From NCBI GenBank assembly GCA_002269645.1, contig NIVC01004242.1, forward strand, positions 1 to 53,517: a stretch of 53,517 nt of DNA, read 5' to 3'. Below the pieces are notes generated by a model. The model had not been told where the DNA came from. It saw only the letters and a list, made by a program, of their open reading frames with translations, and ran no database searches. Position 1 is the first letter of the stretch. Each line of letters begins with the position of its first letter. This document shows, piece by piece, positions 4,196 to 51,986 of this stretch. Source of the DNA: Macrostomum lignano. Taxonomy: Eukaryota. The position numbers and the translations under genes are program-made.

Positions 4196-7100
4196 CTGCG
4201 GTCGGAGGGTGTCAACATTTCGATCTCTCCTCACGGTTCCCATTCCGGAATTTACTGCCTCTCAAAAGATCTCCGAATATTATTTGAGATTCCCACAGAT
4301 CTTCAAGGTCCCAAGAGCCCAATGAGACTCAAAGGATCCCAAGAGATCCCAAGAAATCCCAAAAAAATCCTAAAGGATCCCAAGAGACCCCAAAGGATCC
4401 CAAGAGACCCCAAAGGATCCCAAGAGACCCCAAAGGACCCCAAGAGATCCCAAAGGATCATAAAAGATCCCAGAAAATTTCAAAAGATCTCAAAGGATCT
4501 CAAGAGATTCCAAAGGATCTCAAGAGATTCCAAAGGATCTCAAGAGATCCCAAAAGATTCCAAAAGATCATAAGAGATACCAAGAGATCTCAAAAGATCT
4601 CGAAAGATGATTATGATCCCAAAGGATCATAAGAGATCCAAAGATGCCCAAGAGATCCAAAGAGACCAAAGAGATCCTAAGAGACCAAAGAGATCCTAAG
4701 AGACCAAAGAGATCCCAAGAGATCCCAAGAGACCAAAGAGATCCCCAAGAGACCCAAGAGACCCCAAGATGCCCGTTGCGATCCCCGGAATCCCTCGAGA
4801 TCTTTTGCGAATCCCGCAGATCCCCCATTGTCTCTCGAGATCTCCGATATCCCCTAGAGATCTGGAAATCCCTCGAGACTCCGAGACCCCCAAGACACCT
4901 CATGACTCAGACATTAAGCCCTTGAGACATGACTCCAAGACAGCTTTAGATTTTGCAGTAAGGGAATAAAGATAACATAAACAATATCGTCTCCATTAGC
5001 CGGAGACCTACCGTAGATCATCGGGTTCACGCAGGAGTTGGTGAAGGCGAAGGTCAAACAGAGATAGACAACATCAGTTTCCGATGACTTACTGAAACGA
5101 GAATAGCCGGTCGGTGAAAGCGACAGACTTGCACTTTTATAAATTATTAATTGAAGGCTTCTCTTACTGTTTGCTGCCCTCTGGCAAGAACGTCATGGCC
5201 AAAGTGACAAACCAGTAGGGCGCCCAGCAGAGCAGGAAGGCGAGAACTGAAAAAAAACATTGAATTCATAGCTCGTATTCAGATATTCGATATCCTTGTA
5301 CTCTAGTTGAAAACCGCTCCAAATCCTCTGGCACATCTGCGCTTCCTCTTAAAGACTTTTACGTAATTTGTCTGTCATTTAACTCAAATTTAGCTAGCGG
5401 CTGCTTCCTCTGCTCTGCCTCTCCCTATTCCCCTTTTCTCAAATCCGTTTTTGATCGCAAGTTCTGATAAGTGATTGCCTGATATGCCGCACTCTGCATC
5501 TCTTCTACCTGCTTCCTCATTTCCTGTTAATCCTATTTGCGTCATTTTTCCCGATGTCATTGCTTTTTGTTTCTATTTTCTGTGCAGTATATTTTTATCT
5601 TTAACAAAACATCTATCGAATTGATTTCTGCTCTATCCTGTAAAATAATAAAACAGTCTCTCTTGCTCCGAAGTATAGAAGGCCGCTACAACTCGATTTT
5701 CCTAGAAATGAACTGGAAGCCGTTATTTGTCGAATTCATTTGTCAGAATGCACTCAGTATGCGATCTACTAGAGAATGCACAGCGCTGAATTGCCATAGA
5801 CAAATTCGTTCGAGAGAAAGAAACCGATTTCTCCACAAATATACGAGCGAGTGCCTTCCTCCCTGGCCTGTGGTTCATTTCTAAGAAAATCGACTGTTTA
5901 TCGTCCTGATCTACGTAGGTGTGCAACCGACAGCTCATCTGAAGGCTGCGTGCGGCTGTTCAGTCCAAGGACTGGGGGGGAGTCGCCACACACACCCTCA
6001 ATTACCCCAGCTAATGCTGGCACCCATTTTACAGCTGGGTGAACTGAAGCAATGCAGAGTTAAGTGTCTTGCTCAAGGACACAAATTGTTCCGACTCGGT
6101 TGAGAATCGAACCCCTGACCTTTCAGCCGTGAGTACGACGCTCCAACCACTAGGCTGCAAACCTAGCCCATGGTTGATGATATATATTGATACTAATCAC
6201 TGATGAGGACTGCGAGACCAGAGATCCCTTACGGGAATTGGACCTGCCAATGTATAATTTACTGCAGATGATAACGTATTTTACCTTACATTTAATAGCT
6301 CAAGAAGATAGAGACACAATGGAAATTCTAGTAAAATTCATCAAAGACATGACGCAAGCCAGAATCCAACTGGCCTGAGGCTTCATAAATCAGCTTCAAT
6401 ACTCGGTTTTTGCGCGAGATTTTAACTTGCGTTACGTCGAAAAAATAATAGCATTAAAAATAATAATAGTTAAAACTAATTTCATATTAATAAAATAACT
6501 CTGACCTGAATTGGCCAAACGGGCTGTTTACCTGAGCCAGTTTCCTCACTAGGAAAGCAATGAGGTCAGACGATGAAGATTAAAGAAAGATTTTCTCTTT
6601 GATCTCACGGCTACACCCCTGGCTATTCTCTCTGAGAGCGAGCAGGTCTGGCAAGAGCTGATGGTAGTTGGAGTCGAGAGGAAGGGACTCCCGGCGGAGG
6701 CACTAGTCCCGATTAGATAGACAGACAGTACGTACACGGGAATTTCGATAGCGTTCCATCTTTCATTGAAATTTAGAAAATTTAATTAGGTAATATATTG
6801 CAATTCAACGTCTAATGACTCGCGTACCAAATGGATTTGCACATTGGTAGCTTCGATCATGGGACTTAATGACCTAATTAGTGTTCATAAGAAGCAGGCA
6901 CTTCCTGGTACCGTTTTTGTCAATGAGACGATATTTTTTCGACAATTTACGTAGAAACAAGTTAATCCGAAAGAGGCCACTGGCCGCTGGTGCGTGTCTA
7001 CGTAAAGTGAAGTCTTTAGATGCTGATTGATGAGTCGTATAGTCTCTCTCTCCCCTCCCCCCTCTTGTTGGCGGCTCACCGATGGTGACGGTCATGCGCA

Positions 7101-14139: not shown

Positions 14140-14603
14140 GTATGGGATGAAGGGGAGATTTGGGACCAGGGGTGATAGTGGGATATTTGGGATAAGGGAT
14201 AATGGGAGATTTGGGACCAGGGGTAGTGGGATATTTGGGATAAGGGATAATGGGAGATTTGGGACCAGGGGTAGTGGGATATTTGGGATCAGGGATAGGG
14301 GGAGATTTGGGATCAGGGATAGGGGGGAGATTTGGGATCAGGGATAATGGAAGATTTGGGATCAGGGATAATGGGAGATTTGGGATCAGGGATAGGGGGA
14401 GATTTGGGATCAGGGATAATGGGAGATTTGGGATCAGGGATAGGGGGGAGATTTGGGATCAGGGATAGGGGGGAGATTTGGGATCAGGGATAGGGGGGGG
14501 ATTTGGGATCAGGGATAGGGGGGAGATTTAGGATCAGGGATAGTGGGAGATTTGGGATCAGGGAAAAATGGATATTTAGGATCAGGGATAGTGAAGATTT
14601 GGG
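14140..14603. repeat. ~20-22-bp G-rich minisatellite (GGGAGATTTGGGATCAGGGATA)n, interrupted by the LINE; continues 18929-19060
   Basis: Direct reading on both sides of the element. Confidence 0.9.
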
Positions 14604-18813: not shown

Positions 18814-19377
18814 GCGACTTCACTTCAACGGAAGTCATTGGTCGCCAGGGGCTAGCGGAATGGGCGGTCTCCTCCGCCTCCCCGCTGCATCCGCCGGACG
18901 CCCCCTGCAGCTAAGTCAAGTAAGTCAAGGGGGGAGATTTAGGATCAGGGATAGTGGGAGATTTGGGATCAGGGAAAAATGGATATTTAGGATCAGGGAT
19001 AGTGAAGATTTGGGATCTGAGATAGTGGGAGATTTGGGATCAAGGATAGTGGAAGGTTTGGTTCATGATTAATATGGAGATTTTTCGGTATTCTCGAGCT
19101 TGCCGACTGGGAAAAGTCACGCAAATGCCAGCTGCATTTCCAGCACGTTTCCAACTCTGCTGTCAGATCTGCACGCACGCGAAAGTGGCAAATCAATTAG
19201 GAGACATCAATTTATTTCAACTTGCTGCAGACTCTGGCAAGTGTTGGTTCCCCATCTCGGATCTCTGCAGCTTCCACCTGACTAATTTGCATATGCAAAT
19301 TTATTTCAATTTGCCCACAGCAACGGAAAATATCATTTTTTCAGCAGAATTGAGCGGCATAAAAGTCCTGAAAAAGG

Positions 19378-19661
19378 TATTGATAATGTACATTGCAGCA
19401 CGGGGCCAGCGGTTTAACAGTCCTATTGATAATGTGCATTGCAGCACGGGGCCAGCGGTTTAACAGTCCTATTGATAATGTACATTGCAGCACGGGGCCA
19501 GCGGTTTAACAGTCCTATTGATAATGTACATTGCAGCACGGGGCCAGCGGTTTAACAGTCCTATTGATAATGTACATTGCAGCACGGGGCCAGCGGTTTA
19601 ACAGTCCTATTGATAATGTACATTGCAGCACGGGGCCAGCGGTTTAACAGTCCTATTGATA
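19378..19661. repeat. 46-bp tandem repeat, 6 near-identical copies (TATTGATAATGTACATTGCAGCACGGGGCCAGCGGTTTAACAGTCC)
   Basis: Units start at 19378, 19424, 19470, 19516, 19562 and 19608; one substitution in copy 2; no spacers. Confidence 0.95.
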
Positions 19662-23548: not shown

Positions 23549-26500
23549 CTAAAAATTTGAAGATAATTTTCAGTTCTGAGGTCAAAGAGAAGGGGAAAGA
23601 AAAAAAATTGTTAGAAAAAATTATCCCTTTGAGTCATTGCACTGCCTTTGCGCAGATCCCGCTGCGGCTCGGAGGCAATCGAGCGCTTTTTCATTCTATC
23701 TGAATGCCAACAGGGCCGACTGCGACCACTCAGGCTGTGCTTCCCTGTCTGCTGCTCTCTGCCTCTCTGCCTCTCTGCCTCTCTGCCTCTCTGCCTCTCT
23801 GCCTCTCTGCTTCTCTGCCTCTCTGCCTCTCTGTCTCTGCCTCTCTGCCTCTCTGCCTCTCTGCCTCTGCCTCTCTGCCTCTCTGCCTCTCTGCCTCTCT
23901 GCCTCTCTGCCTCTCTGCCTTTCTGCCTCTCTGCCTCTCTGCCTCTCTGTCTCTGCCTCTCTGCCTCTCTGCCTCTGCCTCTCTGCCTCTCTGTCTCTCT
24001 GCCTCTCTGCCTCTCTGCCTCTCTGCCTCTGCCTCTCTGCCTCTCTGCCTCTCTGCCTCTCTGCCTCTCTGCCTCTCTGCCTCTCTGTCTCTGCATCTCT
24101 GCCTCTCTGCCTCTCTGTCTCTCTGTCTCTGCATCTCTGCCTCTCTGTCTCTGCCTCTCTGCCTCTCTGTCTCTGCCTCTCTGCCTCTCTGCCTCTCTGC
24201 CTCTCTGCCTCTCTGTCTCTGCCTCTCTGCCTCTCTGCCTCTCTGCCTCTCTGCCTCTCTGCCTCTCTGCCTCTCTGCCTCTCTGCCTCTCTGCCTCTCT
24301 GCCTCTCTGCCTCTCTGCCTCTCTGCCTCTGCCTCTCTGCCTCTCTGTCTCTGCATCTCTGCCTCTCTGCCTCTCTGTCTCTCTGTCTCTGCATCTCTGC
24401 CTCTCTGTCTCTGCCTCTCTGCCTCTCTGTCTCTGCCTCTCTGCCTCTCTGCCTCTCTGCCTCTCTGCCTCTCTGTCTCTGCCTCTCTGCCTCTCTGTCT
24501 CTCTGTCTCTGCATCTCTGCCTCTCTGTCTCTGCCTCTCTGCCTCTCTGTCTCTGCCTCTCTGCCTCTCTGCCTCTCTGCCTCTCTGCCTCTCTGTCTCT
24601 GCCTCTCTGCCTCTCTGCCTCTCTGCCTCTCTGCCTCTCTGCCTCTCTGCCTCTCTGCCTCTCTGCCTCTCTGCCTCTCTGCCTCTCTGCCTCTCTGCTT
24701 CTCTGCCTCTCTGCCTCTCTGCCTCTCTGCCTCTCTGCTTCTCTGCCTCTCTGCCTCTGCCTCTCTGCCTCTCTGTCTCTGCCTCTCTGCCTCTCTGCCC
24801 CTTTGTCTCTGTCTCTCTGTCTCTTCTTTTGTCAGAACGGTATATAGCCAGCTGGTCTTTTTTTCGACACTCACTCGGCGATGACGGGCACGCTGCCTCG
24901 TCGCTTCGGCTTCATCACTACCCGGGTTTGGTTTCGCCAGGAGATGTCGATCACTGATGGCTGCAGTCGCCAGGGCTCGCCGTCGATCTAGGGTATGAAA
25001 AGCATTCGGGTACTCAGGTGTTTAAGGTATCTAGGGCCGGGGGGGCAGTACCCAGTGGGACAATTGTGCAGATTGCCTCGAGTTGGCCCAAAGCACCTGA
25101 ATGTTTAGCAGAAGTTAAGCACAGCTGGCTACGGTTAGCAAATGGTAGACTATGATGAACTTCCTTGTTCACCCTGCTGTGATAAGGGTAACACACGTTG
25201 AGAGGTTGTCTTAGAAGTGTACAAGCTGTGCGGGCACCGCACCAGGCCATCCTTGCAGTGGGTCAGGTGTGTTTTTATCAGTATGAGCCATTATTTATTT
25301 CTGAAAAGGTCTGTTCTGCTTCTAAAAGAATTCCATGATCCAGATCGGGTCAGATGTGTTCAAGGACGACCTAAGTAAACGGATTGGAAACTTGGTTTCT
25401 TTAGAAAAATTAGGGTTTTGCGCGAAAATGCACTACGGAGATAAAGGCTACGGAGATCATAAGTCCCAAAGTACATGTGTCTAAAATCACAAAAATAAGT
25501 AAAATAACAACAAAAATAATTTCTAGCTAATTGGTTCTTCCTTTCATTGCCTTTATATTTATTAAACTGCAGCACCAACAATAATGGAAAATAACTGATG
25601 CATTTTCATTAAACAACAAGTCCACTACGCTCGTATTGTCCTAAAGCAGTATTCTAAAGCAAAATTTTATACTTTTGTTTATAAATGCATAGATTCGGAC
25701 TATATATAAACAAAAATATTGAATACAGCTTATACTCAAATTCATGCTAGATTTTTTAATAAATTAGAAGGACTATTTGAATTACATAATAATAAGGCCA
25801 AGTAAAAAAAAATAATTTTTTCATTTCGGTACCCCTTCCGGCTTTTCGACATATCTACATATTTACCTAAAAATATTCAATATAAATAAACAAAAAAATA
25901 ATAAAGCAAAAGACAGAGACCTAAATATTAAAATAAAATAAAATAAAAGATCCTATAAAAAACTCTAGATCACTTTTTGTGCCGAAACAATGAAAAGTTC
26001 CCATGTCCGTAGTGCATTTTTCTCACAAAATCGGCCCCAATTTTTTTTTAAGAAACGAAAGTACTTTTGCTTGAGTTGTCTTTCAATGCACTAAAGAACC
26101 GCCACTCATTCCCCATCTTGAGCATTTCCCTGCCAACCAACCTGAATCGGAATGGGCTTCATCGTGCTGACTCTTGCAGTCTTGCACTGGCACAGCCTGT
26201 GCCCGTGACCGCCCATCTGCACGGTTGCCTGCGAGCAGAAAGTTGCGGTTGACTTGCCTTGAGAATTTGTTAATTACAATCACTATATCCCTTATTAAAA
26301 CCCTTTTTGAGAGTCTGACAGTACTATTTTTGCATCTGTGCCCAATTCAGAACAGTATTGATTGAGCTGATCTCTTGTTTTCTTCCTCTGTATCCTGACT
26401 CAAACCTTCACCCAAACCCTAACACTGGCTCTAACCCTAACCCTAACTCTGGCTCTAACCCTAACCCTAACCCTAACTCTGGCTCTAACCCTAACCCTAA

Positions 26501-29500
26501 CCCTAACTCTGGCTCTAACCCTAACCCTGACTCTGGCTCTAACCCTAACCCTAACCCTAACTCTGGCTCTAACCCTAACCCTAACCCTGACTCTGGCTCT
26601 AACCCTAACCCTAACCCTGACTCTGGCTCTAACCCTAACCCTAACCCTGACTCTGGCTCTAACCCTAACCCTAACTCTAACCTTGACTCTAACGAAGCCC
26701 TGGCATCTAACCCTGAAGATAATGGGCTGTGCAGCCGCTCCTAAATTACCAGGTGACTGGAGCTGAACCCGATTACTTCAACGCTGCCATCGTCGTGTCT
26801 CTGGGGCTCGAATCCCTGACTACAGGCTGGACTGCCCCACGGAGTAGCGCCAGCGCTGTACTTGGCAATGTTGAGAAACAGGATCGACGTGGCCCGGAGC
26901 TCCCGGATTCGATCTGTGTAGTCGGTGCCGTCGCACTGTCGGATGAAGTTTCAATTTGAAATGGACAGCTTACGTTCATTTTTTACACTGCATTGAAACA
27001 GCTATGCGATGAATGATCTTGCTATCTGTTCTATTCATCCAGAGCATTTTCCTTCTTCCTTTCTATATTTTTAGATAGGTGGTTGTAGCCTAGTGGTCTG
27101 AGCGTCGGACTCACGACTGAAGGATCGGGGGTTCGATTCCCGATCCCACTGTAACAATTTGTGTCATTGAGCAAGACATTTAACTCTGCATTGCTTCAGT
27201 TCACCCAGCTGTAAAATGGGTGCCAGCATTAGCTGGGGTAATTGAGGGTGTGTGGCGACCCCCCAGTTCTTGGAATGAACAACCGTACGCAGCTTTCAGA
27301 TGCGCCGCGCAATAGCTACGGCTGAGCTGTCGGTTGGGGACGGTTGCACATCTGGCCCAATGGGGGCAGATGTAATCAATTTTTTTTCAGCTTCATTCTC
27401 CTCTCGTTCTTCACCTTCCCCACCTTCCTCTTCTTCTCATTCTCTTCATATTCTTCCTTTAGTCTTTTCCCCGTTCTATGAGAAAATAAACTCTGGTTTT
27501 GACACTAAAATTTTCTTACCTCCAAGCCGACGAACTGACTCAGATCTCTCCACTGTCTGGTGATGACGGATCTCGACCCTTCCTAGAATTAATAATCAAA
27601 TAAAGTACAACTGTATGGAGGCACAGGGAAGTTAGGCTTATTATACGAGAGCAATTTTGAAAAAGTTTCGGAAATACGTGTAATGATACGAGTAACTAGG
27701 CACGCACCCCTGCGTAGAACATCATGTTCCTGAGGCGGCTGTTAAACCTTTCCGGATTGGCTTCTGAAAATCAGAGGCAGCGATGGGGCGAATACGCCAT
27801 GTCAGTAGCAGTAGTTCAACTGTAATTTACAATCAACATCGAGCCTCGAACCTCTAGACTCGTGAAACTCCAAAGCAACAGCCGCGTCGGCACCGAGGCT
27901 GAAGTAGTTGTTGAAGACATTCAGAGGCGGCTGGTCGTACGGAGGCGACTGCTCCTCGTCTTCAGATGCCTGAGATGCCGCACTGCTGGGGTGGGCCGCG
28001 AAGCTAATGTTCCACCTGCGAGAGGCGAGAAAATCTGAGACGATGAAACCAACCAACCAACCAACCAACCAACCAACCAACCAACCAACCAACCAACCAA
28101 CCAACCAACCAACCAACCAACCAACCAACCAACCAACCAACCAACCAACCAACCAACCAACCAACCAACCAACCAACCAACCAACCAACCAACCAACCAA
28201 CCAACCAACCAACCAACCAACCAACCAACCAACCAACCAACCAACCAACCAACCAACCAACCAATCAATCAATCAATCAATCAACCAACCAACTCACCGA
28301 TCGAGCTGAGCAATCCGGCCTTCCTCCACACAGCAGAGCACCTTCGTCAGTGACTCGTCAGCGTAGCCGCTGCCCCAGCCGAGCGTCCTTGCCAGGTCGT
28401 TTCCGGTACCCAGAGGCAGGATGGCCACTGGCGGCCCGGGTTCAATGCCCAAATTGTCTATGGTCGAGAGCACCCAGCCCACCGTGCCATCGCCGCCGCA
28501 TACCAGCAACCGGAGATTCGGCGCCCCGCGGTACAGCTCCAGAGCTAGGCGAGGCCCACCACAGGCGGTCAAGTCAAACACCTGTCGCGGGTTGAGCAGC
28601 CACTGGAACTTGCGCATTAGCCGGGGCCCCTGGTTGCCGCCGGATTTCGGGTTGATCAGTACAACGATGGGCGTTGTCGGTTGTCCCGGCGTCGTCTGCA
28701 GGCGGAAGCAGTCCAACGATTCATCGTCAACGGCGAGCTTGACAATCCAAGCCGGGGGCACCGTGATGGAGGCAAGGGGACCCAGACTGCAGCACTCGCT
28801 CAGCAGCGGCTGGGTGAAGCAGCCGATCTTGTTATGATAGGCGGCTTTGCACCAGCTGCAAGCGATGGCCACGACGTCCTTGTTGGCGTTGAAAGCGAAC
28901 TTCTGCTGGAATGTCTGGCGGTCGGGTTAAGGGGACTAGCCGTCCGATTTCCGATTTACCATTCATCTGTCTTGTCCGATTCGCAGTCACAATCACAGTG
29001 TCTTCCATTTGGGAATTCCTCTCGTTCTCACTCTCCTTCATTCACACCTACCACCAATTTCTTTTCACTCGCAACCTCCCAATTTATCTCTACCCAGTCC
29101 CAATCCATTTTCTCTCTCGAATGTCATCATCTCATCATTAATTTATCCCTAATATGCGCTGATCCAGTGGGGATATTCAGGATGCACCTGGGTCCCCCCC
29201 GGTGGATCTACGAGCCGGCAAAGTTCTCGGCGCGAGTGCGAAATCGCCGAAAAGTAGACGCCTCCTCGGGAGAGCGCTAAGTGCGACAGCCTGCCGCTCC
29301 AGGACCGGCGATGCCTCAGAAGTGACGCACTTTCATCTCCCTGGGCTCATCATTCTCAAGGGACCAAAAAATTAAGTTGGGAACGTTGGGTCGTCCACGT
29401 CTCACCTCTTGATCGGCATGTATGGGGGAGGGGAGGTTCTGATCCAGGGCTCCAGTGGGAGTGGGAGTGGGATCAGTTTTTTTTCTCGATCCCATTTCAT

Positions 29501-31328: not shown

Positions 31329-34300
31329 CTAAGACACTAAGACACTAAGACACTAAGACACTAAGACACTAAGACACTAAGACAGACACTCACACAGGAC
31401 AGACAGTCTGACGGACACTAAGACAAATTCGACTATCAAACACTTGCACCCACCTTCTCCAGTACAGGTGCACAGCCTGTGTGAACAACAATTTTGCAGA
31501 TGGCGCATTTCTTTTTGCTTCCGATCTTCTGAAAGGGTTTTAATTTATTAATTTATTTAAGAGACATACGACACTATAAGCGAATATGCACAGAAGTGGG
31601 CCATATAAAGGCCTGACTGCAACCGCAGGACTTACGCAGCATTCCGAATCCCCAACATAGCACGGGTCGCCTCCGGAGCCCCTGTCCAGCCAAACGTGCT
31701 CGCCCTGAGAGGCCCCGGGCTGGAAGGCGGTGAAATGAAAAATTACGGCTCAAAGCACGCACTGATGCCGCAGATTGAGAAGGTGATAAAGTTCAAGGGC
31801 CAGTTGCATTTTTCTTCTAGCGAAAAGATAAGAGCTTCTCTGCACGGTGCTGCACACTTTCCCCTCAATTACTTAAAGAAACTCAATTCTTATCACGCAA
31901 GACTGCTTTGGCTTAAAAATTACTTTGACAGAGGCACTGCTTTAGAAGACAGGCCCGAGCACAAGAAACGCTTGAACCTTTTTAGCCAGCATTCAGCCAG
32001 TCATGTCGACCTTCGAAGGCAAGTGGCAGATGACGAGCTCGGAGAATTTCGATGCCTACATGAAAGCCCTGGGCACCAGCTTCCTGGTGCGCAAGGCGGC
32101 TGCGGCCGCAACTCCGGTGCAGGACATTCGTTGTCATGGCAACGGTCGTTACACCATAGTGACAATCACCAGCATCAAGACAATCGAGCTGAATTTCACT
32201 CTGGACGAAGAGTTCGACGAGACCACCGCGGACGGGCGTCAGGCAAAGTCTGTGGTCACCATGGCGACCCCCGGCAAGCTGGTGCACCAGCAGCGAGGTC
32301 AACCGGAGGTCATCATTACCCGACAGCTGGAGCCAGACGGTCAGGGCTTCGTCATGACGCTGGAGTGCAAAGGAGTGACCTGCGTCCGGCGGTACAAGAG
32401 GATGTAGACTCTAAATGCACTGTTCTGATTGGGATAACTATCGCAATAACAATGTCGAACTCACTGCGAAATAAACCAATTTTTGAGAGCTGACAAACTG
32501 TGCCTCAACTACCAACTTGACAAATGGATCTACCATTGCTAGAAAAGCCCTGTTTCGATATCTATTTAATATCTATTTTGATTTCACAGCTTATTTAAGA
32601 TGCAAGGCACCTGATTTGCTACATGGTATTTGAGAGACTCGAGCTACATATTTAAAGAGGCGCTCGACCACTCACGCTCCAGTCCATCGATGACTTCCAG
32701 TCCCTTCGGTCGGCGTCCCAAACTCCGTCACCGGCGCTGAGCTCGCCTGTCAGCGATTGCCGGCTCCGCCGCTGCCGCCGTCGCCTCTGCTGCTGCTGAT
32801 CCTGACGCCGACACCTCAAGGCTGAGGTGGCAGACTCAGAGGCGGCAGACGCCAGTGCAAAGGCCCGCCTAGCAGCATCGGCACCATGAGAGAAAGTTCA
32901 ATTTAGAAAGCTTGAATATCGTTCAGCAATATTGCAGCTCATGCTTTTCTCGTAGCTTATATAATTAATAATAATTGATTACATCTGCCCCAATTGGGCC
33001 AGGTGTGCAACCGACATCTCAGCCGCAGCTATTGCGCGGCGCATCTGAAGGCTGCATACGGCTGTTCAGTCCAAGGACTGGGGGGTCGCCACACACCCTC
33101 AATTACCCCAGCTAATGCTGGCACCCACTTTACACCTGGGTGAACTGAAGCAATGCAGAGTTAAGGGTTTGCTCAAGGACACAAATTGTTCCCGTGGGAT
33201 CGCGAATCGAACCCCCGACCTTTCAGTCGTGAGAGTCCGACGCTCTAACCACTAGGCTACAGCCCCTACTACTAACTAATAGTGCCTGAAATAGTGTATA
33301 GTATTCGCTGAAAAAGCAAATAAAAAAGCACAAACACAAAACACAAAAAGGAAACCAGTTGTTCTCGTAGCATTTTTGTCAGTGCTCAGATATGGAAAGT
33401 TTCTCTGAAGATGGACGGATTGAAAACGAAGCAACTCAAGCTGAAAACTCCAACTGTCCTGAGCCGGCATGCAGCTAAGACGCTGAAACACTTGGAAATG
33501 CTCAGGCTGAGGATGCGAGCCACTGATTGAAGGGGGCGGGTAGCGACCGGAGCATCCACTAAATGAATCGCAGTTGCTCAGCCAACAGACTCGCTAATCC
33601 GCGAGGCTAAATCTGCTTCAGCCTCCGAATGGCACCGTTGGGAGTTCGGAGTGGAGGGGGCGCTGAGGGTGAACGGAATGCGTTTTCGCAAGCTCCGCCC
33701 CCATCGACTCTGGGCGGGATTTGCATTGCCAGCACGGGATTAGACATTTGCATATAGACACTGGGAAGAATGCCGAGAGCCGGTTGATGCCTAGATGAAG
33801 ATGAAGAAGCTGGATGAGGATTACAAGTTGAGCTGGCTGCGAACGCCTGGTTGGCTCGTCAAAGGCGTGAGAATTCACTCAATTTCTATTGTGGGTAAGT
33901 CAAAACAGATAATAACAGCTGAATCACCGGCAGCTCACTAGCTAAGCATGCTCATAAATATGCACTGCAGTTAGAGATTAGCAAGTGGCTCATAGACGTT
34001 GTGCTCACTAAGTGCATACAATACGTGCAATCTAAGATCGAAGGCCAGTCAGGTAATTTAATGATAAATAAAACGTACACAGCGAGTAACAACGAGATAC
34101 ACGAAAACAGTAAAGTCTCCTGCAGTCTTACATAAACTGTACCAGCCTGAAATGCATGGGGTTCGGGTAACAAGCAGTGCTGAGATCAAGTCAAGCAGCA
34201 AATCCAAGCGCGGAACCAGCCCGCCCGCTCTACTCTTCTACTCTCCCTCTTAATTTTTGGCCTTTCCGTCATTTGTAAGAAGCTGCAAGCGATGTGGACG

Positions 34301-37120: not shown

Positions 37121-38800
37121 GATCGAGCTCAAGATGACCAGACGTACTGATCGAGCTTAAGGTGACCAGATAATCCGATCGAGCTCAAGATGACTAGACG
37201 CACTGATATCGAGCTCAAGATGACTAGACGCACTGATATCGAGCTCAATATGACTAGACATACTGATATCGAGCTCAATATGACTAGACGCACTGATATC
37301 GAGCTCAAGATGACTAGACGCACTGATATCGAGCTCAATATGACTAGACATACTGATATCGAGCTCAATATGACTAGACGCACTGATATCGAGCTCAAGA
37401 TGACTAGACGCACTGATATCGAGCTCAATATGACTAGACATACTGATATCGAGCTCAATATGACTAGACATACTGATATCGAGCTCAATATGACTAGACG
37501 CACTGATATCGAGCTCAAGATGACTAGACGCACTGATATCGAGCTCAATATGACTAGACATACTGATATCGAGCTCAATATGACTAGACATACTGATATC
37601 GAGCTCAATATGACTAGACGCACTGATATCGAGCTCAAGATGACTAGACATACTGATATCGAGCTCAAGATGACTAGACATACTGATATCGAGCTCAATA
37701 TGACTAGACGCACTGATATCGAGCTCAAGATGACTAGACATACTGATATCGAGCTCAAGATGACTAGACATACTGATATCGAGCTCAAGATGACTAGACA
37801 TACTGATATCGAGCTCAAGATGACTAGACATACTGATATCGAGCTCAATATGACTAGACATACTGATATCGAGCTCAATATGACTAGACGCACTGATATC
37901 GAACTCAAGATGACTAGACATACTGATATCGAGCTCAAGATGACTAGACATACTGATATCGAGCTCAAGATGACTAGACATACTGATATCGAGCTCAAGA
38001 TGACTAGACATACTGATATCGAGCTCAATATGACTAGACATACTGATATCGAGCTCAAGATGACTAGACATACTGATATCGAGCTCAAGATGACTAGACA
38101 TACTGATATCGAGCTCAATATGACTAGACATACTGATATCGAGCTCAAGATGACTAGACATACTGATATCGAGCTCAATATGACTAGACATACTGATATC
38201 GAGCTCAAGATGACCAGACGTACTGATCGAGCTTAAGGTGACTAGATAATCCGATCGAGCTCAAGATGACCAGACGTACTGATCGAGCTTAAGGTAACCA
38301 GATAATCCGATCGAGCTCAAGATGACTAGACGCACTGATATCGAGCTCAATATGACTAGACATACTGATATCGAGCTCAAGATGACTAGACATACTGATA
38401 TCGAGCTCAAGATGACTAGACGCACTGATATCGAGCTCAAGATGACTAGACATACTGATATCGAGCTCAAGATGACTAGACGCACTGATATCGAGCTCAA
38501 GATGACTAGACATACTGATATCGAGCTCAAGATGACTAGACATACTGATATCGAGCTCAAGATGACTAGACATACTGATATCGAGCTCAAGATGACTAGA
38601 CATACTGATATCGAGCTCAAGATGACTAGACATACTGATATCGAGCTCAAGATGACTAGACATACTGATATCGAGCTCAAGATGACTACACGCACTGATA
38701 TCGAACTCAAGATGACCAGACGTACTGATATCAAACTCAAGATGACTAGACGTACTGATATCGAGCTCAAGATGACCAGACGTACTGATATCGAGCTCAT
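37121..38800. repeat. 30-bp minisatellite (TACTGATATCGAGCTCAAGATGACTAGACA)n with recurring 56-bp variant block
   Basis: Direct reading; the variant block occurs at ~37125-37180 and twice at ~38201-38312. Confidence 0.97.
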
Positions 38801-39392
38801 GATAAGATGCACGGAAATCACTACACAACGTCGACCTTCCTAAAATAATCAAAACTCGATAGACTGATAACTAAACAATGATTCGACTGTCCAGGCACAC
38901 TTAGGTGTACTACTAAGGCCCGCATTTGTAAGGCAGGCCAATTCTAATGCAATCCCAAGCCTTTTAACAATATCCTGGTTGAGCAGGAAGCCGCGCTCAC
39001 TTTCTTTATGAGGGGCACTTAAAAATCTGCTTGAAAATTACAGACCAGCTCTTCTCTCTAGTCTCTTCCGCCTCGGTCTAATTGTCTTCTTCTGGCGCTT
39101 TGGTCCCGACCCTTTTCCTCCGTACACTTCAGCAGATTGGTGAAATCCACCGAACGAGAGCAGAGTAGGCCGGAGTAAGAGGATCCTCTCTGTTGTCCGG
39201 CCCCCTCAATCAATTGGGGCTGCAGCGATTGCCTTTCTATTTGAGAGCAATTTCTCATAGATGCAACTCGCAGAAGCCTTACTAGGCGGCACAAACGAAC
39301 CGCACATTGAAGTGGAAGAGAAGCAGAGACTCGCGATCTCATTTTCCCTGACCGGCTCTCTCATCAATCGCATCCGGGATGGCGAATTCGCA

Positions 39393-42637: not shown

Positions 42638-42958
42638 AATTCAGATATTCATTCATAAAACCTTAAAGACACGCTCAAGCCGTGGCCTTTCTGCCTGTTA
42701 TAACTAAACCCGCGGTTTCAACTGAGACGTTGAAAATAAGCGCGAGAAAAAAGGCTACCTGGCTGCATCCTTCTTCGCCACTGTCAATATTAAAGGTTAC
42801 CGGCACAATTGTCCTCATATTCCACGGCTATTCAAGTCTGCCGTCTCTCCTCCCCTTCCGCTGTCAGGATCTGAGAGCTACAGCCGATACAAAAGCACAG
42901 TTTAACCACAACAGGAACCAAGCTGGCAACCTGGTTAGCAGCACTCACGCCTTTGGCG

Positions 42959-45050
<2,092 letters not shown>

Positions 45051-45995
45051 TTTTCAACTCAGTTCAAAACTCAAGCTGATATCCGTTGTTGACCATGTCT
45101 GTGTTTTAACCGTATCGTGCTGTATTCCTCCAAGTATGCGAGCGCCACTTTTTTACATGCTACCTTCTGCTCCTCATCTATGCGTTGGGTTCTGGACGTT
45201 TATCTGAGCGTATCATCCCGGCTATTGTTGGCCTGATATGAGCTATATTCTCATACTTTTTGCGGTATTACGGTATGTTTTTTAGCTTTAGAACTGCTTA
45301 TTATTGATTAAATAGTAAACAGAGATAAGCATAAATCTTTGAGTAACTGACATAATCGTAATTCATATGCACTGATTTATACATCATTATGCCTGGTAGA
45401 ATTGCACTCTGCTTGTGCAAACCAAATGCATGTATTATTTTATGTAAAACATTTTTTCTGAATTTTCATGGAAAAAATATAGTAAAAATTAAATCGATAT
45501 GAACATGAATTTCGACTTTGTTCAATGCGAGCAACTTTGGCTATTCAATCGTAGAATTATTAAAAGCACGACGGTCTTGCAAACTGCAGTGATTCATTCA
45601 ATAAAAAGGGACGAAGGTTGTAAGTGACGTCAGCAGCAATTAGAATATACCTTTGCTGCCCTTTGCACTATCCGGGAGCTGTGGGGTAGAAGTAAATCTG
45701 AAAGCTGGACACGGTTGTAGCTGGTATTATTGAAGGTGAATGAATGCATAAATTATGGACAGATATTCGCTAAGGTAGATATTAGCGGACACAGAATGCT
45801 ACTGGAAACACAGAAAGTATCCATAATATAGCTAATATTCCATTCTTTTACTTAACCAACTACTAGAAGTAGGGTTTACTCTAAACTATAACGATTTTAA
45901 AGACCATTTTGTCTCCATCCGACAGAACGGGACAATTGCGGAAGTCAATCAGTTCAGGCGGCTGCATCCGCTTCAGCCTACACGAGCGTCGGGCG

Positions 45996-48396
45996 CTCCA
46001 GTGATTAGAGCTCCAGTGACTGGAGCTCCAGTGATTAGAGCTCCAGTGATTAGAGCTCCAGGGATTAGAGCTCCATTGATTAGAGCTCCATTGATTAGAG
46101 CTCCAGTGATTAGAGCTCCAGTGATTAGAGCTCCAGTGATTAGAGCTCCAGTGATTAGAGCTTTAGTGATTAGAGCTCCAGTGATTAGAGCTTTAGTGAT
46201 TAGAGCTCCAGTGATTAGAGCTCCAGTGATTAGAGCTTTAGTGATTAGAGCTCCAGTGATTAGAGTTCCAGTGATTAGAGCTCCAGTGATTAGAGCTCCA
46301 GTGATTAGAGCTCCAGTGATTAGAGCTTTAGTGATTAGAGCTCCAGTGATTAGAGCTTTAGTGATTAGAGCTCCAGTGATTAGAGTTCCAGTGATTAGAG
46401 CTCCAGTGATTAGAGTTCCAGTGATTAGAGCTCCAGTGATTAGAGCTCCAGTGATTAGAGCTCCAGTGATTAGAGCTTTAGTGATTAGAGCTCCAGTGAT
46501 TAGAGTTCCAGTGATTAGAGCTCCAGTGATTAGAGTTCCATTGATTAGAGCTCCATTGATTAGAGCTCCAGTGATTAGAGCTCCATTGATTAGAGCTCCA
46601 GTGATTAGAGCTCCAGTGATTAGAGCTTTAGTGATTAGAGCTCCAGTGATTAGAGCTTTAGTGATTAGAGCTCCAGTGACTGGAGCTCCAGTGATTAGAG
46701 CTCCAGTGATTAGAGTTCCAGTGATTAGAGCTCCAGTGATTAGAGTTCCAGTGATTAGAGCTCCAGTGATTAGAGCTCCAGTGATTAGAGCTTTAGTGAT
46801 TAGAGCTCCAGTGATTAGAGCTTTAGTGATTAGAGCTCCAGTGATTAGAGCTCCAGTGATTAGAGTTCCAGTGATTAGAGCTCCAGTGATTAGAGCTCCA
46901 GTGATTAGAGCTTTAGTGATTAGAGCTCCAGTGATTAGAGCTCCAGTGATTAGAGCTTTAGTGATTAGAGCTCCAGTGATTAGAGCTCCAGTGATTAGAG
47001 CTCCAGTGATTAGAGCTCCAGTGATTAGAGCTCCAGTGATTAGAGCTTTAGTGATTAGAGCTCCAGTGATTAGAGCTCCAGTGATTAGAGCTCCAGTGAT
47101 TAGAGCTCCAGTGATTAGAGCTCCAGTGATTTGAGCTCCAGTAATTAGAATTCCAGTGATTAGAGCTCCAGTGATTAGAGTTCCAGTGATTAGAGCTCCA
47201 GTGATTAGAGCTCCAGTGATTAGAGCTCCAGTGATTAGAGCTCCAGTGATTAGAGCTCCAGTGATTAGAGCTTTAGTGATTAGAGCTCCAGTGATTAGAG
47301 CTTTAGTGATTAGAGCTCCAGTGATTAGAGTTCCATTGATTAGAGCTCCATTGATTAGAGCTCCAGTGATTAGAGCTCCAGTGATTAGAGCTCCAGTGAT
47401 TAGAGCTCCAGTGATTAGAGCTTTAGTGATTAGAGCTCCAGTGATTAGAGCTTTAGTGATTAGAGCTCCAGTGATTAGAGTTCCAGTGATTAGAGCTCCA
47501 GTGATTAGAGTTCCAGTGATTAGAGCTCCAGTGATTAGAGTTCCAGTGATTAGAGCTCCAGTGATTAGAGCTCCAGTGATTAGAGTTCCAGTGATTAGAG
47601 CTCCAGTGATTAGAGCTCCAGTGATTAGAGCTCCATTGATTAGAGCTCCAGTGATTAGAGCTCCAGTGATTAGAGCTTTAGTGATTAGAGCTCCAGTGAT
47701 TAGAGCTTTAGTGATTAGAGCTCCAGTGATTAGAGTTCCATTGATTAGAGCTCCATTGATTAGAGCTCCAGTGATTAGAGCTCCAGTGATTAGAGCTCCA
47801 GTGATTAGAGCTCCAGTGATTAGAGCTTTAGTGATTAGAGCTCCAGTGATTAGAGCTTTAGTGATTAGAGCTCCAGTGATTAGAGTTCCAGTGATTAGAG
47901 CTCCAGTGATTAGAGTTCCAGTGATTAGAGCTCCAGTGATTAGAGTTCCAGTGATTAGAGCTCCAGTGATTAGAGCTCCAGTGATTAGAGCTTTAGTGAT
48001 TAGAGCTCCAGTGATTAGAGCTTTAGTGATTAGAGCTCCAGTGATTAGAGCTCCAGTGATTAGAGTTCCAGTGATTAGAGCTCCAGTGATTAGAGCTCCA
48101 GTGATTAGAGCTTTAGTGATTAGAGCTCCAGTGATTAGAGCTCCAGTGATTAGAGCTTTAGTGATTAGAGCTCCAGTGATTAGAGCTCCAGTGATTAGAG
48201 CTCCAGTGATTAGAGCTTCAGTGATTAGAGCTCCAGTGATTAGAGCTCCAGTGATTAGAGCTCCAGTGATTAGAGCTCCAGTGATTAGAGCTCCAGTGAT
48301 TTGAGCTCCAGTAATTAGAATTCCAGTGATTAGAGCTCCAGTGATTTGAGCTCCAGTAATTAGAATTCCAGTGATTAGAGCTCCAGTGATTAGAGC
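45996..48396. repeat. 15-bp satellite (CCAGTGATTAGAGCT)n, ~160 units
   Basis: Direct reading; variant units (GTTCCA, GCTTTA, CCATTG) and an internal ~1.17 kb duplication marked by GATTTGAGCTCCAGTAATTAGAATTCCA. Confidence 0.98.
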
Positions 48397-48686
48397 GTCG
48401 GACTCTCACGACTGAAAGGTCGGGGGTTCGATTCGTGATCCCACGGGAACAATTTGTGTCCTTGAGCAAGACACTTAACTCTGCATTGCTTCAGTTCAAC
48501 CAGGTATAAAATGGGTTCCAGCATTAGCTGGGGCAATTGAGGGTGTGTGGCGACCCCCCCCCCCCTAGTCCTTGGACTGAACAGCCGTACGCAGCCTTCA
48601 GATGCGCCGCGCAATGGCTGCGGCTGAGCTGTCGGTTGCACACCTGGCCCTATTGGACTTGGCAGGTGCAATGTAGTCAATTAATT
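48383..48686 (+). mobile_element. tRNA-derived CORE-type SINE, copy 4, 5' head fused to the 15-bp satellite
   Basis: GAGCGTCGGACTCTCACGACTGAAAGGTCGGGGGTTCGATTC onward matches copies 2 and 3. Confidence 0.9.
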
Positions 48687-50529
48687 AGTTATTGCCTTGC
48701 AACAAGATTATTGATTTGCTCTAACTGGGGGAGTTATGTTCCCACATAAATGTACATCTTGGGTTGCAAGCGGTCAATAATTCATGTACATCGTCGTAGC
48801 ATTCACTTTTACAACCTCAAATATATAAATCGCACCACGTTTTTTCGCTCAGCTAAAACCACCATCTTCAGACTTTACAGTTGGCGTCGCAAGCACACTT
48901 AGGCCTGTGCGTCTGTGCGTTCAGTGAACCGGAGAGCCAGTGGACTTCCTGGTACTCCCGACTCAAATCAGCGGCCGAATGCTCAAGTTCTCAACACTCA
49001 AGGACTTCTTAATCAGAGATCAAATAGTGGAGGCACGCTGCTCCCATAAAACTTGGTGAAGATTGCCGCAGGAGTCTAAAATCTCTCAGTGAACCGCATG
49101 ATTTAATTTTCACGCAATCAAAAGCTTCAGAGACCAACGCGCTCTGAACCCAGCTGTTTTTAAGTTCTCTTTAAAAAAGCATGCATCTGCAATCCAGAGC
49201 CAACGAAAAATGTCAACCATCTGCGAAGTCAAGAACTTTCACCAAGTGTTCGAAGCTTCAAAAAATTCTAACAAGGGAAAAGTTATTGGCTTCCAGATGA
49301 ACAGCTTCAGGCTTCAGCTGACAGCTGCTACCACAGGGACATCCTGGTCAAAACCTTTAGTTCGGCGTTTTACTTCCAGGCCAGCCAGCCCGAAGCAATA
49401 TTCTACGACTCGTACACAGAATAGTGTAATGCTTTCAGCATAGGACTTTCGGCTTTTCTCGGGAAGCTCGACAAATGCCGGGTATCCGTGTCTGTCTGGG
49501 ATGAACTATCCCTGTCGCTCTTCTTCCGTTATTATGCCTGGTCGTAATTTCTTTACCTAAGCAATTAGAGTGAAAGACAGGGTTCCCTACCGCGGGATGG
49601 AAAGAGAGACGGAGGCGTGAATCCGAAGCCTTCGTCAGGCCGGAGTCAGAAGGACGGTTTCTCTTCATCAGCCCCCCCCCCCCCGATGCAGTGCAAGTTC
49701 CTCAACTCTGGCCACGATCAGTCAGTTCCCCTTCATAATTCTCTCTGCCTACTTTTTTCTCCCGGCTCCCTTTGAACAAAAAGCATCCAGTCTCTGCGCC
49801 ACTCCCCTAGGACTTCGCTTTCGTGTCTCGCCATCCTCCCAGCCCTTCACAGCGCTCTTTTGCGACTGACTGATTGAATATAATAGGGCCCGGGCCGCGG
49901 CACTCCGCACAGTGCTTATGGCGCCAACTGGGATTGCCCCGAAAAAAGTTTGCGATGCAGATGCGGAGCTCTCTGGACAAAGTAGAGGCCCGCTAATCTC
50001 TCTCTCTCTCATGTGGGGAGTTGTGTTGACCCAGTGAGCCGCGCTCTCAGCACTCTGTGTCCATCTATCTTTCTCTCTCTCTCCACTTAACCTAGGACTC
50101 CCACCGGCGGTCCATGTCGGCGAAGGCAAGACTTGGAGCGGTTAGGACGCGCTTCCCATTCCCCCCCCATTTTTTCATAGAAATCGGCCGCTCGTCCTAT
50201 TCACCGAAGCAAAGCGCTCCACCCCACTGGTCGGTCGTTGCTTTGATTCCGAAGTCAGTCCCGCATTGCGGACTTGCAGGTCTAGTCGCGATCTGGAGCC
50301 ACTTGGTCGGATTCGACGCAGTTTAATTAAGAGAAATTATCTAAAAATAAATTTGGAGGGCCAAGTTAATGCCTAACTTCCCTACACTAAGCCTGTAAAT
50401 TGTAGACTAAAGCTGCCTGACTGAAGATCCATTGTTCAGAAAGTACATGTGCACTAATTGTAAATCGTATGGTTGTCATAGCATTGTCAAAAGGACTATC
50501 ATAATTTTAACTTATACGAACTTTACGAC

Positions 50530-51986
50530 TGATTGAGATAAAAGCGGATGAACCAGAACTGACTGACTGAGATAAAAGCGGATGGACCAGAACTGACTGA
50601 GATAAAAGCGGATGAACCAGAACTGACTGAGATAAAAGCGGATGGACCAGAACTGACTGAGATAAAAGCTGATGGACCAGAACTGACTGAGATAAAAGCG
50701 GGTGGACCAGAACTGACTGAGATAAAAGCGGGTGGACCAGAACTGACTGAGATAAAAGCGGATGGACCAGAACTGACTGAGATAAAAGCGGATGGACCAG
50801 AACTGACTGAGATAAAAGCGGGTGGACCAGAACTGACTGAGATAAAAGCGGATGGACCAGAACTGACTGAGATAAAAGCGGATGGACCAGAACTGACTGA
50901 GATAAAAGCGGATGGACCAGAACTGACTGAGATAAAAGCTGATGGACCAGAACTGACTGAGATAAAAGCGGGTGGACCAGAACTGACTGAGATAAAAGCG
51001 GATGGACCAGAACTGACTGAGATAAAAGCGGATGGACCAGAACTGACTGAGATAAAAGCGGGTGGACCAGAACTGACTGAGATAAAAGCGGATGAACCAG
51101 AACTGACTGAGATAAAAGCGGATGGACCAGAACTGACTGAGATAAAAGCGGATGAACCAGAACTGACTGACTGAGATAAAAGCGGATGAACCAGAATTGA
51201 CTGAGATAAAAGCGGATGGACCAGAATTGACTGAGATAAAAGCGGATGAACCAGAACTGACTGAGATAAAAGCGGATGAACCAGAACTGACTGAGATAAA
51301 AGCGGATGAACCAGAATTGACTGAGATAAAAGCGGATGAACCAGAACTGACTGAGATAAAAGCGGATGGACCAGAACTGACTGAGATAAAAGCGGATGAA
51401 CCAGAACTGACTGACTGAGATAAAAGCGGATGAACCAGAACTGACTGAGATAAAAGCGGATGAACCAGAACTGACTGAGATAAAAGCGGATGAACCAGAA
51501 TTGACTGAGATAAAAGCGGATGAACCAGAACTGACTGAGATAAAAGCGGATGGACCAGAACTGACTGAGATAAAAGCGGATGAACCAGAACTGACTGACT
51601 GAGATAAAAGCGGATGAACCAGAATTGACTGAGATAAAAGCGGATGGACCAGAATTGACTGAGATAAAAGCGGATGAACCAGAACTGACTGAGATAAAAG
51701 CGGATGAACCAGAACTGACTGAGATAAAAGCGGATGAACCAGAATTGACTGAGATAAAAGCGGATGAACCAGAACTGACTGAGATAAAAGCGGATGGACC
51801 AGAACTGACTGAGATAAAAGCGGATGAACCAGAACTGACTGACTGAGATAAAAGCGGATGGACCAGAATTGACTGAGATAAAAGCGGATGGACCAGAATT
51901 GACTGAGATAAAAGCGGATGAACCAGAATTGACTGAGATAAAAGCGGATGGACCAGAATTGACTGAGATAAAAGCGGATGAACCAG
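50530..51986. repeat. 30/34-bp minisatellite (GACTGAGATAAAAGCGGATGAACCAGAACT)n
   Basis: Direct reading. Confidence 0.97.

What the first reader, a model, noticed from the sequence alone, without database searches (positions are those of the whole stretch)
45974..48686. A 2.4-kb satellite born inside the Pol III A-box head of a SINE
Seen: the last 15-bp unit runs directly into SINE copy 4 (CCAGTGATTAGAGC-GTCGGACTC) and aligns 12/14 with the intact SINE head in copy 3 (CTAGTGGTTAGAGC-GTCGGACTC). At the other end, the flank reads CAGCCTA-cac-GAGCGTCGG (45974-45992), which looks like a collapsed copy of the same head (cf. CAGCCTAGTGGTTGGAGCGTCG in copy 1). A small fold-back (GAGCG..CGCTC, CTCCAGTGACTGGAG) sits at the junction. 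About 160 units therefore lie between two pieces of one SINE 5' end. Inference: a captured snapshot of satellite genesis from the tRNA D-arm/A-box of a retroposon, seeded by fold-back or template switching. It yields a long array of degenerate A-box half-sites ahead of one intact B box, ~1 kb downstream of egr. It could recruit TFIIIC, produce Pol III or small RNAs, or act as a boundary. This is the strongest candidate for undescribed biology in the window.
Basis: partly seen in the sequence, partly recalled or inferred. Interest (0 to 1): 0.7.

Follow-up and report, generated by a model that had tools for sequence, protein, structure and literature searches.

The report
Minisatellite grown from a SINE head
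A 2.4-kb run of 160 copies of a 15-base unit has grown out of the tRNA-like front end of one copy of a MIR-like SINE just downstream of an egr gene; it is a clean but ordinary example of a known way in which mobile elements seed tandem repeats.

Summary
Positions 45995-48396 are 160 head-to-tail copies of a 15-bp unit with no indels. The last unit runs in register into the body of a SINE (copy 4, to about 48692). Three other copies of this SINE lie in the window. The SINE has a weak tRNA-like head and a MIR/CORE-like body. Next to the junction the unit matches the intact SINE head at 12 of 14 positions. That fixed register is what makes the match significant; a free search finds 12/15 matches often. 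The 45 bases left of the array resemble the first 30 bases of the SINE only moderately (p 0.0004-0.02, depending on scoring), and they are far more decayed than the SINE body. Unit-type maps show that the array grew by block duplications of 315-345 bp. I read it as a SINE-derived minisatellite that arose in place and is probably neutral. This kind is known from Alu-derived minisatellites and from SINE-derived satellites in squamates. Seeding by a fold-back, TFIIIC or Pol III recruitment and boundary function have no support here. The units carry only a broken A box and no B box. The host genome could not be found in any collection, so whether this 15-mer occurs at other loci is untested.

The parts
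45957..45994 (+). Possible decayed 5' end of SINE copy 4: GGCGGCTGC-(9-nt insert)-CAGCCTA-cac-GAGCGTCGG-GC. It corresponds to SINE positions 1-30.
   Evidence: Semi-global alignment to the SINE heads gives p 0.0004-0.02 against genomic 45-mers. The exact 9-mer GAGCGTCGG also closes the array on the right at 48393-48401. It is much more decayed than the SINE body, so the assignment is tentative.
45995..48396 (+). Minisatellite: 160 units of 15 bp (consensus GCTCCAGTGATTAGA) plus a terminal GC that is shared with the SINE.
   Evidence: TRF; unit typing, 11 variants and no indels; block duplications at offsets of 27 and 80 units; the unit occurs nowhere else in the window.
48385..48692 (+). SINE copy 4: rest of the tRNA-like head from AGTGATTAGAGC|GTCGG, the CORE/MIR-like body, and the tail ...GTAGTCAATT.
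   Evidence: 89% identical to copy 3 over 310 bp and 88% to copies 1 and 2. MIR-core match 25/29.
48425..48435 (+). B-box-like motif GGTTCGATTCG of SINE copy 4.
   Evidence: Present in all four copies. Comparison with the consensus GGTTCGANNCC rests on established knowledge.
46010..46024 (+). Palindromic unit variant I (GCTCCAGTGACTGGA). A second copy lies at 46670-46684.
32960..33266 (-). SINE copy 3: intact reference copy with a full head (A box TAGCCTAGTGG at 33259-33249).
   Evidence: Rfam tRNA model 19 bits, E 0.08, over 33266-33195.
27076..27387 (+). SINE copy 2 (intact head).
5930..6165 (-). SINE copy 1 (intact head, internally deleted, truncated 3' part).
44436..45050 (+). Last coding exon of an egr-type gene (three C2H2 fingers). 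An AATAAA lies at 45600-45605.
   Evidence: That AATAAA is the poly(A) signal is inference.

Best explanation
A CORE-type (MIR-like), tRNA-headed SINE inserted about 0.9 kb downstream of the egr stop codon. Later a short piece of its head, the D-arm/A-box segment (G)CCTAGTGGTTAGAGC, was duplicated in tandem. The duplication probably arose by replication slippage or unequal exchange, possibly after a first duplication of about 21 bp that also left GAGCGTCGG on the left side. The 15-bp unit then expanded to 160 copies, mostly by unequal sister-chromatid or allelic exchange and gene conversion that copied blocks of 20 or more units at a time. The array pushed the first 30 bases of the SINE about 2.4 kb away from the rest and destroyed its A box, so this SINE copy is dead as a Pol III gene. 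The array is most likely a neutral, probably length-variable minisatellite in a genome unusually prone to making them.

Shown: the array, the in-register junction, the SINE family and the block duplications.
Inferred: the order of events, the slippage or exchange mechanism, and neutrality.
For: (1) The array and SINE body are contiguous and in register. The unit matches the intact head at 12/14 positions next to the junction. By my own binomial arithmetic with p = 0.25, the chance of 12 or more matches out of 14 is about 3e-6, with no freedom of register.
(2) The array stops at the SINE, and no units follow the SINE tail.
(3) The left flank resembles SINE positions 1-30 (p 0.0004-0.02), and the 9-mer GAGCGTCGG brackets the array.
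(4) Unit strings 84-106 and 111-133 are identical (offset 405 bp), as are 48-68 and 128-148 (offset 1200 bp). Rare variants cluster at both ends. This is the usual signature of unequal exchange with poorly homogenised edges.
(5) About 11 mutational events explain all variation in 2.4 kb, whereas copy 4 has 12 private substitutions in 251 shared columns. The array in its present form is therefore much younger than the insertion.
(6) About 32% of the window is tandem arrays with periods of 8-46 bp (my sum of the intervals), so minisatellite formation is rampant here.
[quoted passage not shown] At least 23% of human minisatellites and satellites derive from transposable elements (PMC3389668).
Against: - No unit retains the SINE bases at two of the three diagnostic positions. 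Unit position 3 is T and position 10 is A in all 160 units. The founder state is therefore inferred, not seen.
- In a free search over any rotation, any SINE position and both strands, 12/15 is common: 42 of 300 random genomic 15-mers reach it. The case rests on the junction register.
- The left remnant has about 23 of 30 matches plus a 9-nt insertion and a 4-nt loss. That is much more decay than in the SINE body, and under strict scoring it is not significant (p 0.04-0.12).
- No clear target-site duplication brackets the whole unit.
- Intact heads offer only a 3-nt direct repeat (AGC...AGC, 14 nt apart) as a slippage substrate, and the unit is 15 nt, not 14.
- No other individual, allele, orthologue or genome copy could be examined.
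Confidence: 0.8

Rival explanations
1. A 5'-truncated SINE copy inserted by chance, or helped by microhomology, at the right edge of an older, unrelated 15-bp minisatellite. The resemblance of the unit to the SINE head is then coincidental.
For: 5' truncation is common for LINE-mobilised elements (established knowledge). The window is one-third minisatellite, so landing next to one is not rare. Free-search similarity of 12/15 is unremarkable. All units differ from the SINE at two fixed positions.
Against: The match is in the exact register of the junction (12/14, about 3e-6 by my arithmetic). The first 7 bases of SINE homology also complete the array unit in phase. The array does not continue beyond the SINE. 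The left flank carries further SINE-head similarity.
Confidence: 0.07
2. The 15-mer is a multi-locus family of SINE-head-derived satellites. It arose once, elsewhere or in a source element, and spread by transposition, conversion or segmental duplication. This locus is then one member rather than the birthplace.
For: Squamate SINE-derived satellites occur at tens to thousands of loci (PMC10702118). Within this window another minisatellite, the 24-bp unit GGGAGATTTGGGATCAGGGATAGT, occurs at two separate loci, 14153-14603 and 18932-19061, so multi-locus minisatellites exist in this genome.
Against: There is no second copy of the unit in 53.5 kb, and the other three SINE copies have plain heads. 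There were no hits for the dimer in metagenome contigs or for the array's ORF in the protein database, but this is weak evidence because the organism seems absent from those collections. A Pol III transcript carrying an array and lacking an A box is an unlikely source element.
Confidence: 0.1
3. The array is a functional element. In this reading its repeated A-box-like sites, together with the downstream B box, recruit TFIIIC or Pol III, yield small RNAs, or insulate egr.
For: One B-box-like motif (GGTTCGATTCG) lies 29 bp after the array. The + strand of the array has no T4 run. Single strands can form GAGCTC-based hairpins (z = -3.7).
Against: In register, the units read AGCTCCAGTGA against the consensus TRGCNNAGTGG, which is 5 of 9 specified positions. 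158 of the 160 units are too far from any B box. TFIIIC affinity resides mainly in the B box (established knowledge). There are no Rfam or tRNA hits in the array. Block-wise turnover and the absence of any conserved comparator give no sign of constraint.
Confidence: 0.03

Closest known systems
SINE-derived satellites (sSats) of squamate reptiles (Vassetzky, Kosushkin, Ryskov 2023, PMC10702118)
   Same: Tandem units are copied from a portion of a tRNA-related SINE. The terminal unit continues into the SINE up to its terminus. Minor variants have SINE ends on both sides. Longer arrays are more homogeneous, and subvariants alternate.
   Different: Their units are 67-215 nt and usually include the B box, body or LINE-derived part. 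They occur at many loci and are often subtelomeric. Here the unit is 15 nt, comes from the A-box/D-arm only, is known at one locus, and the host is an unidentified non-squamate animal.
Alu-derived and other TE-derived minisatellites in human (Jurka & Gentles 2006, as cited in PMC3389668; Ahmed & Liang 2012, PMC3389668)
   Same: An internal segment of a SINE is amplified in place after insertion. Arrays are flanked by short direct repeats in a subset of cases. Expansion is by local duplication of units.
   Different: Most human cases have 2 to a few units, whereas here there are 160. The 9-bp direct repeat brackets the whole array and is not part of each unit, so the direct-repeat slippage model fits only loosely.
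Tandem-like SINE structures in bivalves (PMC11481361)
   Same: They involve SINEs with a conserved central domain, including CORE, and a tRNA head, in invertebrate genomes and near or within genes. Unequal recombination is proposed as the cause.
   Different: Those are multimers of whole or nearly whole SINEs (150 bp or more per unit), not a 15-bp sub-element array.
tRNA-related tandem families of amphibians (PolIII/TAN, OAX, Rana/polIII), as reviewed in PMC10702118
   Same: Tandem repeats contain tRNA-like sequence.
   Different: Their units are 200-360 nt or longer and contain whole tRNA-like genes. No parent SINE has been demonstrated. Here the parent SINE is adjacent and the unit is only a fragment of the D-arm.

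Membership tests
SINE-derived / TE-derived tandem repeat | Head-to-tail tandem array | tested here: met
   160 units, period 15, no indels.
SINE-derived / TE-derived tandem repeat | The unit is homologous to a segment of the element | tested here: met
   12/14 match in the junction register to the head of intact copies. The free-search control is unremarkable, so the register is essential to this result.
SINE-derived / TE-derived tandem repeat | The array is contiguous with the rest of the element (a terminal unit extends to the SINE terminus) | tested here: met
   The last unit runs into 296 bp of SINE body and tail, 89% identical to copy 3.
SINE-derived satellite in the strict sense (sSat, PMC10702118) | Many loci in the genome, with satellite-like abundance and often subtelomeric location | not testable with these tools
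   The genome is not available. There is no second locus in the window and there are no hits in the public collections.
Minisatellite (VNTR) | Unit of about 10-100 bp and array of about 0.5-30 kb | tested here: met
   15 bp x 160 = 2.4 kb.
Minisatellite (VNTR) | Length polymorphism between alleles or individuals | not testable with these tools
   Only one haplotype is in hand. The block duplications show past length changes.
CORE-SINE (MIR-like) family | tRNA-derived head with A and B boxes | tested here: inconclusive
   Copy 3 gives 19 bits on the Rfam tRNA model (gathering score 29, E 0.08) over the full model. ARAGORN finds none. By direct reading, the A box TAGCCTAGTGG and the B box GGTTCGATTC are present.
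CORE-SINE (MIR-like) family | Conserved CORE central domain | tested here: met
   25/29 identity to the MIR core oligonucleotide printed in PMC6344866, far above the window background.
CORE-SINE (MIR-like) family | Target-site duplications and a LINE-related tail | tested here: inconclusive
   Only weak candidate duplications were found: 9-mers with one mismatch for copies 2, 3 and 4, and none for copy 1. The partner LINE is not in the window.
Direct-repeat slippage origin of minisatellites (Haber & Louis; Jurka & Gentles) | The founder unit is bounded by short direct repeats that recur in every unit | tested here: inconclusive
   Intact heads have only AGC...AGC, 14 nt apart. The 9-bp GAGCGTCGG repeat flanks the whole array, but only its first four bases (GAGC) recur in each unit.
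Pol III type 2 promoter / TFIIIC site array | A box TRGCNNAGTGG with a B box 30-60 bp downstream | tested here: not met
   The units match 5 of 9 specified A-box positions. Only the last one or two units lie within reach of the single B box (the consensus comes from established knowledge).

The most novel reading that the evidence does not exclude
In this minisatellite-rich genome the A-box/D-arm of this CORE-SINE may be a recurrent seed. Many SINE copies would then carry 15-bp head arrays, forming a multi-locus SINE-head satellite family with an unusually short unit. This would be the first such case outside squamates. Some of these arrays next to genes such as egr might bind Pol III factors or affect chromatin.
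Probability: 0.1. Interest if true: 0.5.

Novelty: new member of a known kind. Interest (0 to 1): 0.25.

Why it matters
The parent sequence, the junction and perhaps both ends of the parent are still readable at this minisatellite locus. It could therefore serve as a teaching case, or as a starting point for asking why some genomes turn short unique segments into arrays so readily. About a third of this window is tandem arrays. The locus does not open a new mechanism. Tandem repeats derived from SINEs and other transposable elements are already documented in humans and reptiles, and nothing here points to a function.

Tried and rejected
- Exact scans for the satellite dimer (metagenome contigs) and for a 24-mer conserved in all four SINE copies (metagenome, viral and prokaryotic genome contigs) found nothing.
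- Protein-database searches with the array's open frame, (APVIR)n, and with an ORF spanning the SINE found nothing. The aim was to find other copies in public assemblies.
- The egr exon search found only distant EGR relatives, so the organism is unidentified and apparently absent from the collections.
- A full-text search for the SINE and unit sequences found no paper.
- Rfam at gathering threshold and ARAGORN found nothing in the window.
- The target-site duplication search was inconclusive for all four copies.
- I rejected the idea that the long ORFs in the array (377 and 382 aa) are coding. A 15-bp unit without stops in three of six frames gives them automatically, and they have no homologues.
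- I rejected the fold-back as a junction-specific feature, because the same palindromic unit variant recurs at 46670.
- I considered whether edge units are closer to the SINE head than core units. They are not.
Full report
**What is there.** TRF finds one uninterrupted array at 45995-48396: period 15, 160.1 copies, 92% matches, no indels, consensus GCTCCAGTGATTAGA. Cut in phase, it is 160 full units plus a final GC. There are 11 unit types. The main type occurs 96 times, GCTTTAGTGATTAGA 25 times, GTTCCAGTGATTAGA 16 times, and the rest 1-7 times each. The unit occurs nowhere else in the 53.5-kb window, even with 3 mismatches allowed.

**The neighbouring element.** Directly after the array the sequence GTCGGACTCTCACGACTGAAAGGTCGGGGGTTCGATTC is identical to a stretch at 33241-33204 on the minus strand. 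BLAST of that element against the window shows four copies, 87-89% identical to one another over 226-314 aligned bp:
- copy 1: 5930-6165 (-)
- copy 2: 27076-27387 (+)
- copy 3: 32960-33266 (-)
- copy 4: 48385-48692 (+)

This is the only dispersed repeat in the window. Its first 72 bases give a weak, full-length match to the Rfam tRNA model (19 bits, below the gathering score of 29, E 0.08). ARAGORN calls no tRNA. By direct reading, intact copies have an A box (TAGCCTAGTGG) and a B box (GGTTCGATTC). The body matches the mammalian MIR core oligonucleotide printed in PMC6344866 at 25 of 29 positions, far above the window background. It is therefore a tRNA-headed CORE-type SINE. The gene upstream is egr-like: the ORF 44436-45050 has three EGR-type zinc fingers. 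The array begins 945 bp after its stop codon.

**Right junction.** Intact copies read ...GCCTAGTGGTTAGAGC|GTCGGACTC. Copy 4 reads ...CTCCAGTGATTAGAGC|GTCGGACTC. The last array unit therefore occupies exactly the place of the SINE's D-arm/A-box segment and matches it at 12 of 14 positions. With the register fixed by the junction, 12 or more matches out of 14 has a binomial probability of about 3e-6 (my arithmetic, p = 0.25 per base).

The register matters. I let the unit slide freely over the whole SINE in any rotation and on both strands. In that search 42 of 300 random genomic 15-mers also reached 12/15. The unit's best match nevertheless fell at the junction-adjacent position. The array does not resume after the SINE tail. 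That argues against a SINE having landed inside an older array.

**Left junction.** Further left, GGCGGCTGC (45957-45965) resembles the SINE start GGGGCTG. I aligned the SINE heads to the 45 bases left of the array and scored the same alignment against about 9000 genomic 45-mers from this window. Five scoring schemes and two alignment modes gave p = 0.0004-0.02 for copy 3, the closest relative of copy 4, and up to 0.055 for copy 1. An earlier, stricter test with 62-bp windows gave p = 0.04-0.12.

GAGCGTCGG occurs at both edges of the array (45984-45992 and 48393-48401). Only GTCGG is non-trivial there, because GAGC is part of every unit. I take the left flank as probably (about 0.6) the decayed 5' end of the same SINE. 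It shows about 23 of 30 matches, a 9-nt insertion and a 4-nt loss. That is much more damage than in the body of copy 4, which has 12 private substitutions in 251 shared columns.

If the assignment is real, the left piece reaches SINE position 30 while the units start near position 9. A simple in-place amplification of a 15-bp segment does not explain that. A first duplication of about 21 bp (GCCTAGTGGTTAGAGCGTCGG), followed by expansion of a 15-bp unit in the second copy, would explain it. This is inference. Target-site duplications are unclear for all four copies. For copy 4 the only candidate (AGTCAATCAGTT upstream against AGTCAATTAATTAGTT downstream) overlaps the SINE's own tail.

**How the array grew.** Written as a string of unit types, the array contains two long exact repeats. 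Units 84-106 equal units 111-133 (23 units, offset 405 bp). Units 48-68 equal units 128-148 (21 units, offset 1200 bp), and similarity continues to the FGH motif near each block's end. Rare variants cluster at both ends (A I A A J D D ... F G H F G H A).

This is the usual picture of growth by unequal exchange or conversion of multi-unit blocks, with less homogenised edges. About 11 mutational events account for all variation in 2.4 kb. The array in its present form is therefore much younger than the SINE insertion, or strongly homogenised. No unit keeps the SINE base at unit positions 3 and 10. The founder unit is thus not preserved, and 'snapshot of genesis' overstates the case.

**Fold-backs.** The left junction can form three small hairpins (GGCTG/CAGCC, GAGCG/CGCTC and the palindromic variant unit) and folds better than shuffles (z = -3.0). 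Ordinary units can pair through their GAGCTC palindromes (z = -3.7). This may favour slippage. The palindromic variant recurs in mid-array, however, and nothing links hairpins to the origin.

**Function.** In register, a unit reads AGCTCCAGTGA against the A-box consensus TRGCNNAGTGG, which is 5 of 9 specified positions. There is one B-box-like motif, at 48425-48435. TFIIIC binds chiefly through the B box, and the A box must lie a short distance upstream of it (established knowledge). At most the last one or two units could therefore take part in a Pol III promoter, and that promoter has a damaged A box. I found no evidence for any function. The most likely effect is that this SINE copy was inactivated and a neutral, probably length-variable minisatellite was added to the 3' flank of egr.

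**Context.** Summing the TRF intervals, about 17.4 kb of the 53.5 kb (32%) is tandem arrays. Fourteen arrays are longer than 500 bp, with periods of 8-46 bp. This array is the longest, but others of 1.5-1.9 kb are comparable. One other unit (24 bp) occurs at two separate loci. The genome clearly makes minisatellites easily, and a SINE head is just one of many substrates.

**Comparison with what is known.** Ahmed and Liang found that at least 23% of human minisatellites and satellites derive from transposable elements. They cite Jurka and Gentles (2006) for minisatellites derived from Alu (PMC3389668). Vassetzky et al. describe SINE-derived satellites in 56 squamate genomes. Their common architecture is the one seen here: tandem units with a longer terminal unit that continues to the SINE terminus, rarely with SINE ends on both sides (PMC10702118). 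Bivalve CORE, V, Meta and Deu SINEs form tandem multimers (PMC11481361).

What is unusual here is the very short unit (15 nt against 67-215 nt), its origin in the A-box segment alone, and the size reached (160 units). These are differences of degree. I class it as a new member of a known kind.

**Limits.** The organism could not be identified, and no other copy of the SINE or the array was found in any collection. The searches were: metagenome, viral and prokaryotic genome contigs; protein searches with the array ORF and a SINE ORF; the egr exon, which gave only distant relatives; and full-text search for the sequences.

Noticed in passing
window 1-53517 (arrays listed): About 32% of the window is tandem arrays. 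Fourteen arrays are longer than 500 bp, with periods of 8-46 bp (for example 21264-23196, 37122-38803, 8114-9647, 50528-51986). This is an unusually high minisatellite load for a gene-bearing region.
   Followed up: partly
window 14153-14603 and 18932-19061: The same 24-bp unit (GGGAGATTTGGGATCAGGGATAGT) forms two separate arrays 4.3 kb apart, with no flanking homology detected by self-BLAST. This is a multi-locus minisatellite or the remains of a larger duplication.
   Followed up: partly
window 26395-26693: An interstitial telomere-like array, (CCCTAA)-type units mixed with CTCTGG/CTCTAA variants, lies about 380 bp upstream of SINE copy 2.
   Followed up: no
window 48718-48728 (-): CCAGTTAGAGC is an inverted copy of the array unit lacking GAT. 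It sits about 30 bp beyond the SINE tail. It is the only occurrence in the window (expected 0.02), but the pattern was chosen post hoc and is unexplained.
   Followed up: partly
window 19378-19661: There are 6.2 copies of a 46-bp unit at 99% identity, which indicates a very recent tandem expansion.
   Followed up: no
window 48553-48566, and the homologous sites in copies 1-3: A poly-C tract inside the SINE body varies from about 6 to 13 C between copies. This is a second, microsatellite-like unstable site in the element.
   Followed up: no
window 42953-43477 and 44436-45050 (+): These are the egr-type gene's coding ORFs, and the upstream one contains a long poly-Q (CAG/CAA) tract at 43295-43358. 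No near-identical protein exists in the 5.8-billion-protein collection, so the host species seems unrepresented there.
   Followed up: partly
window 5930-6165 (-): SINE copy 1 lacks a 26-bp internal segment (TGCGCCGCGCAATAGCTGCGGC...) that is present in copies 2-4, and it loses homology before the tail.
   Followed up: no
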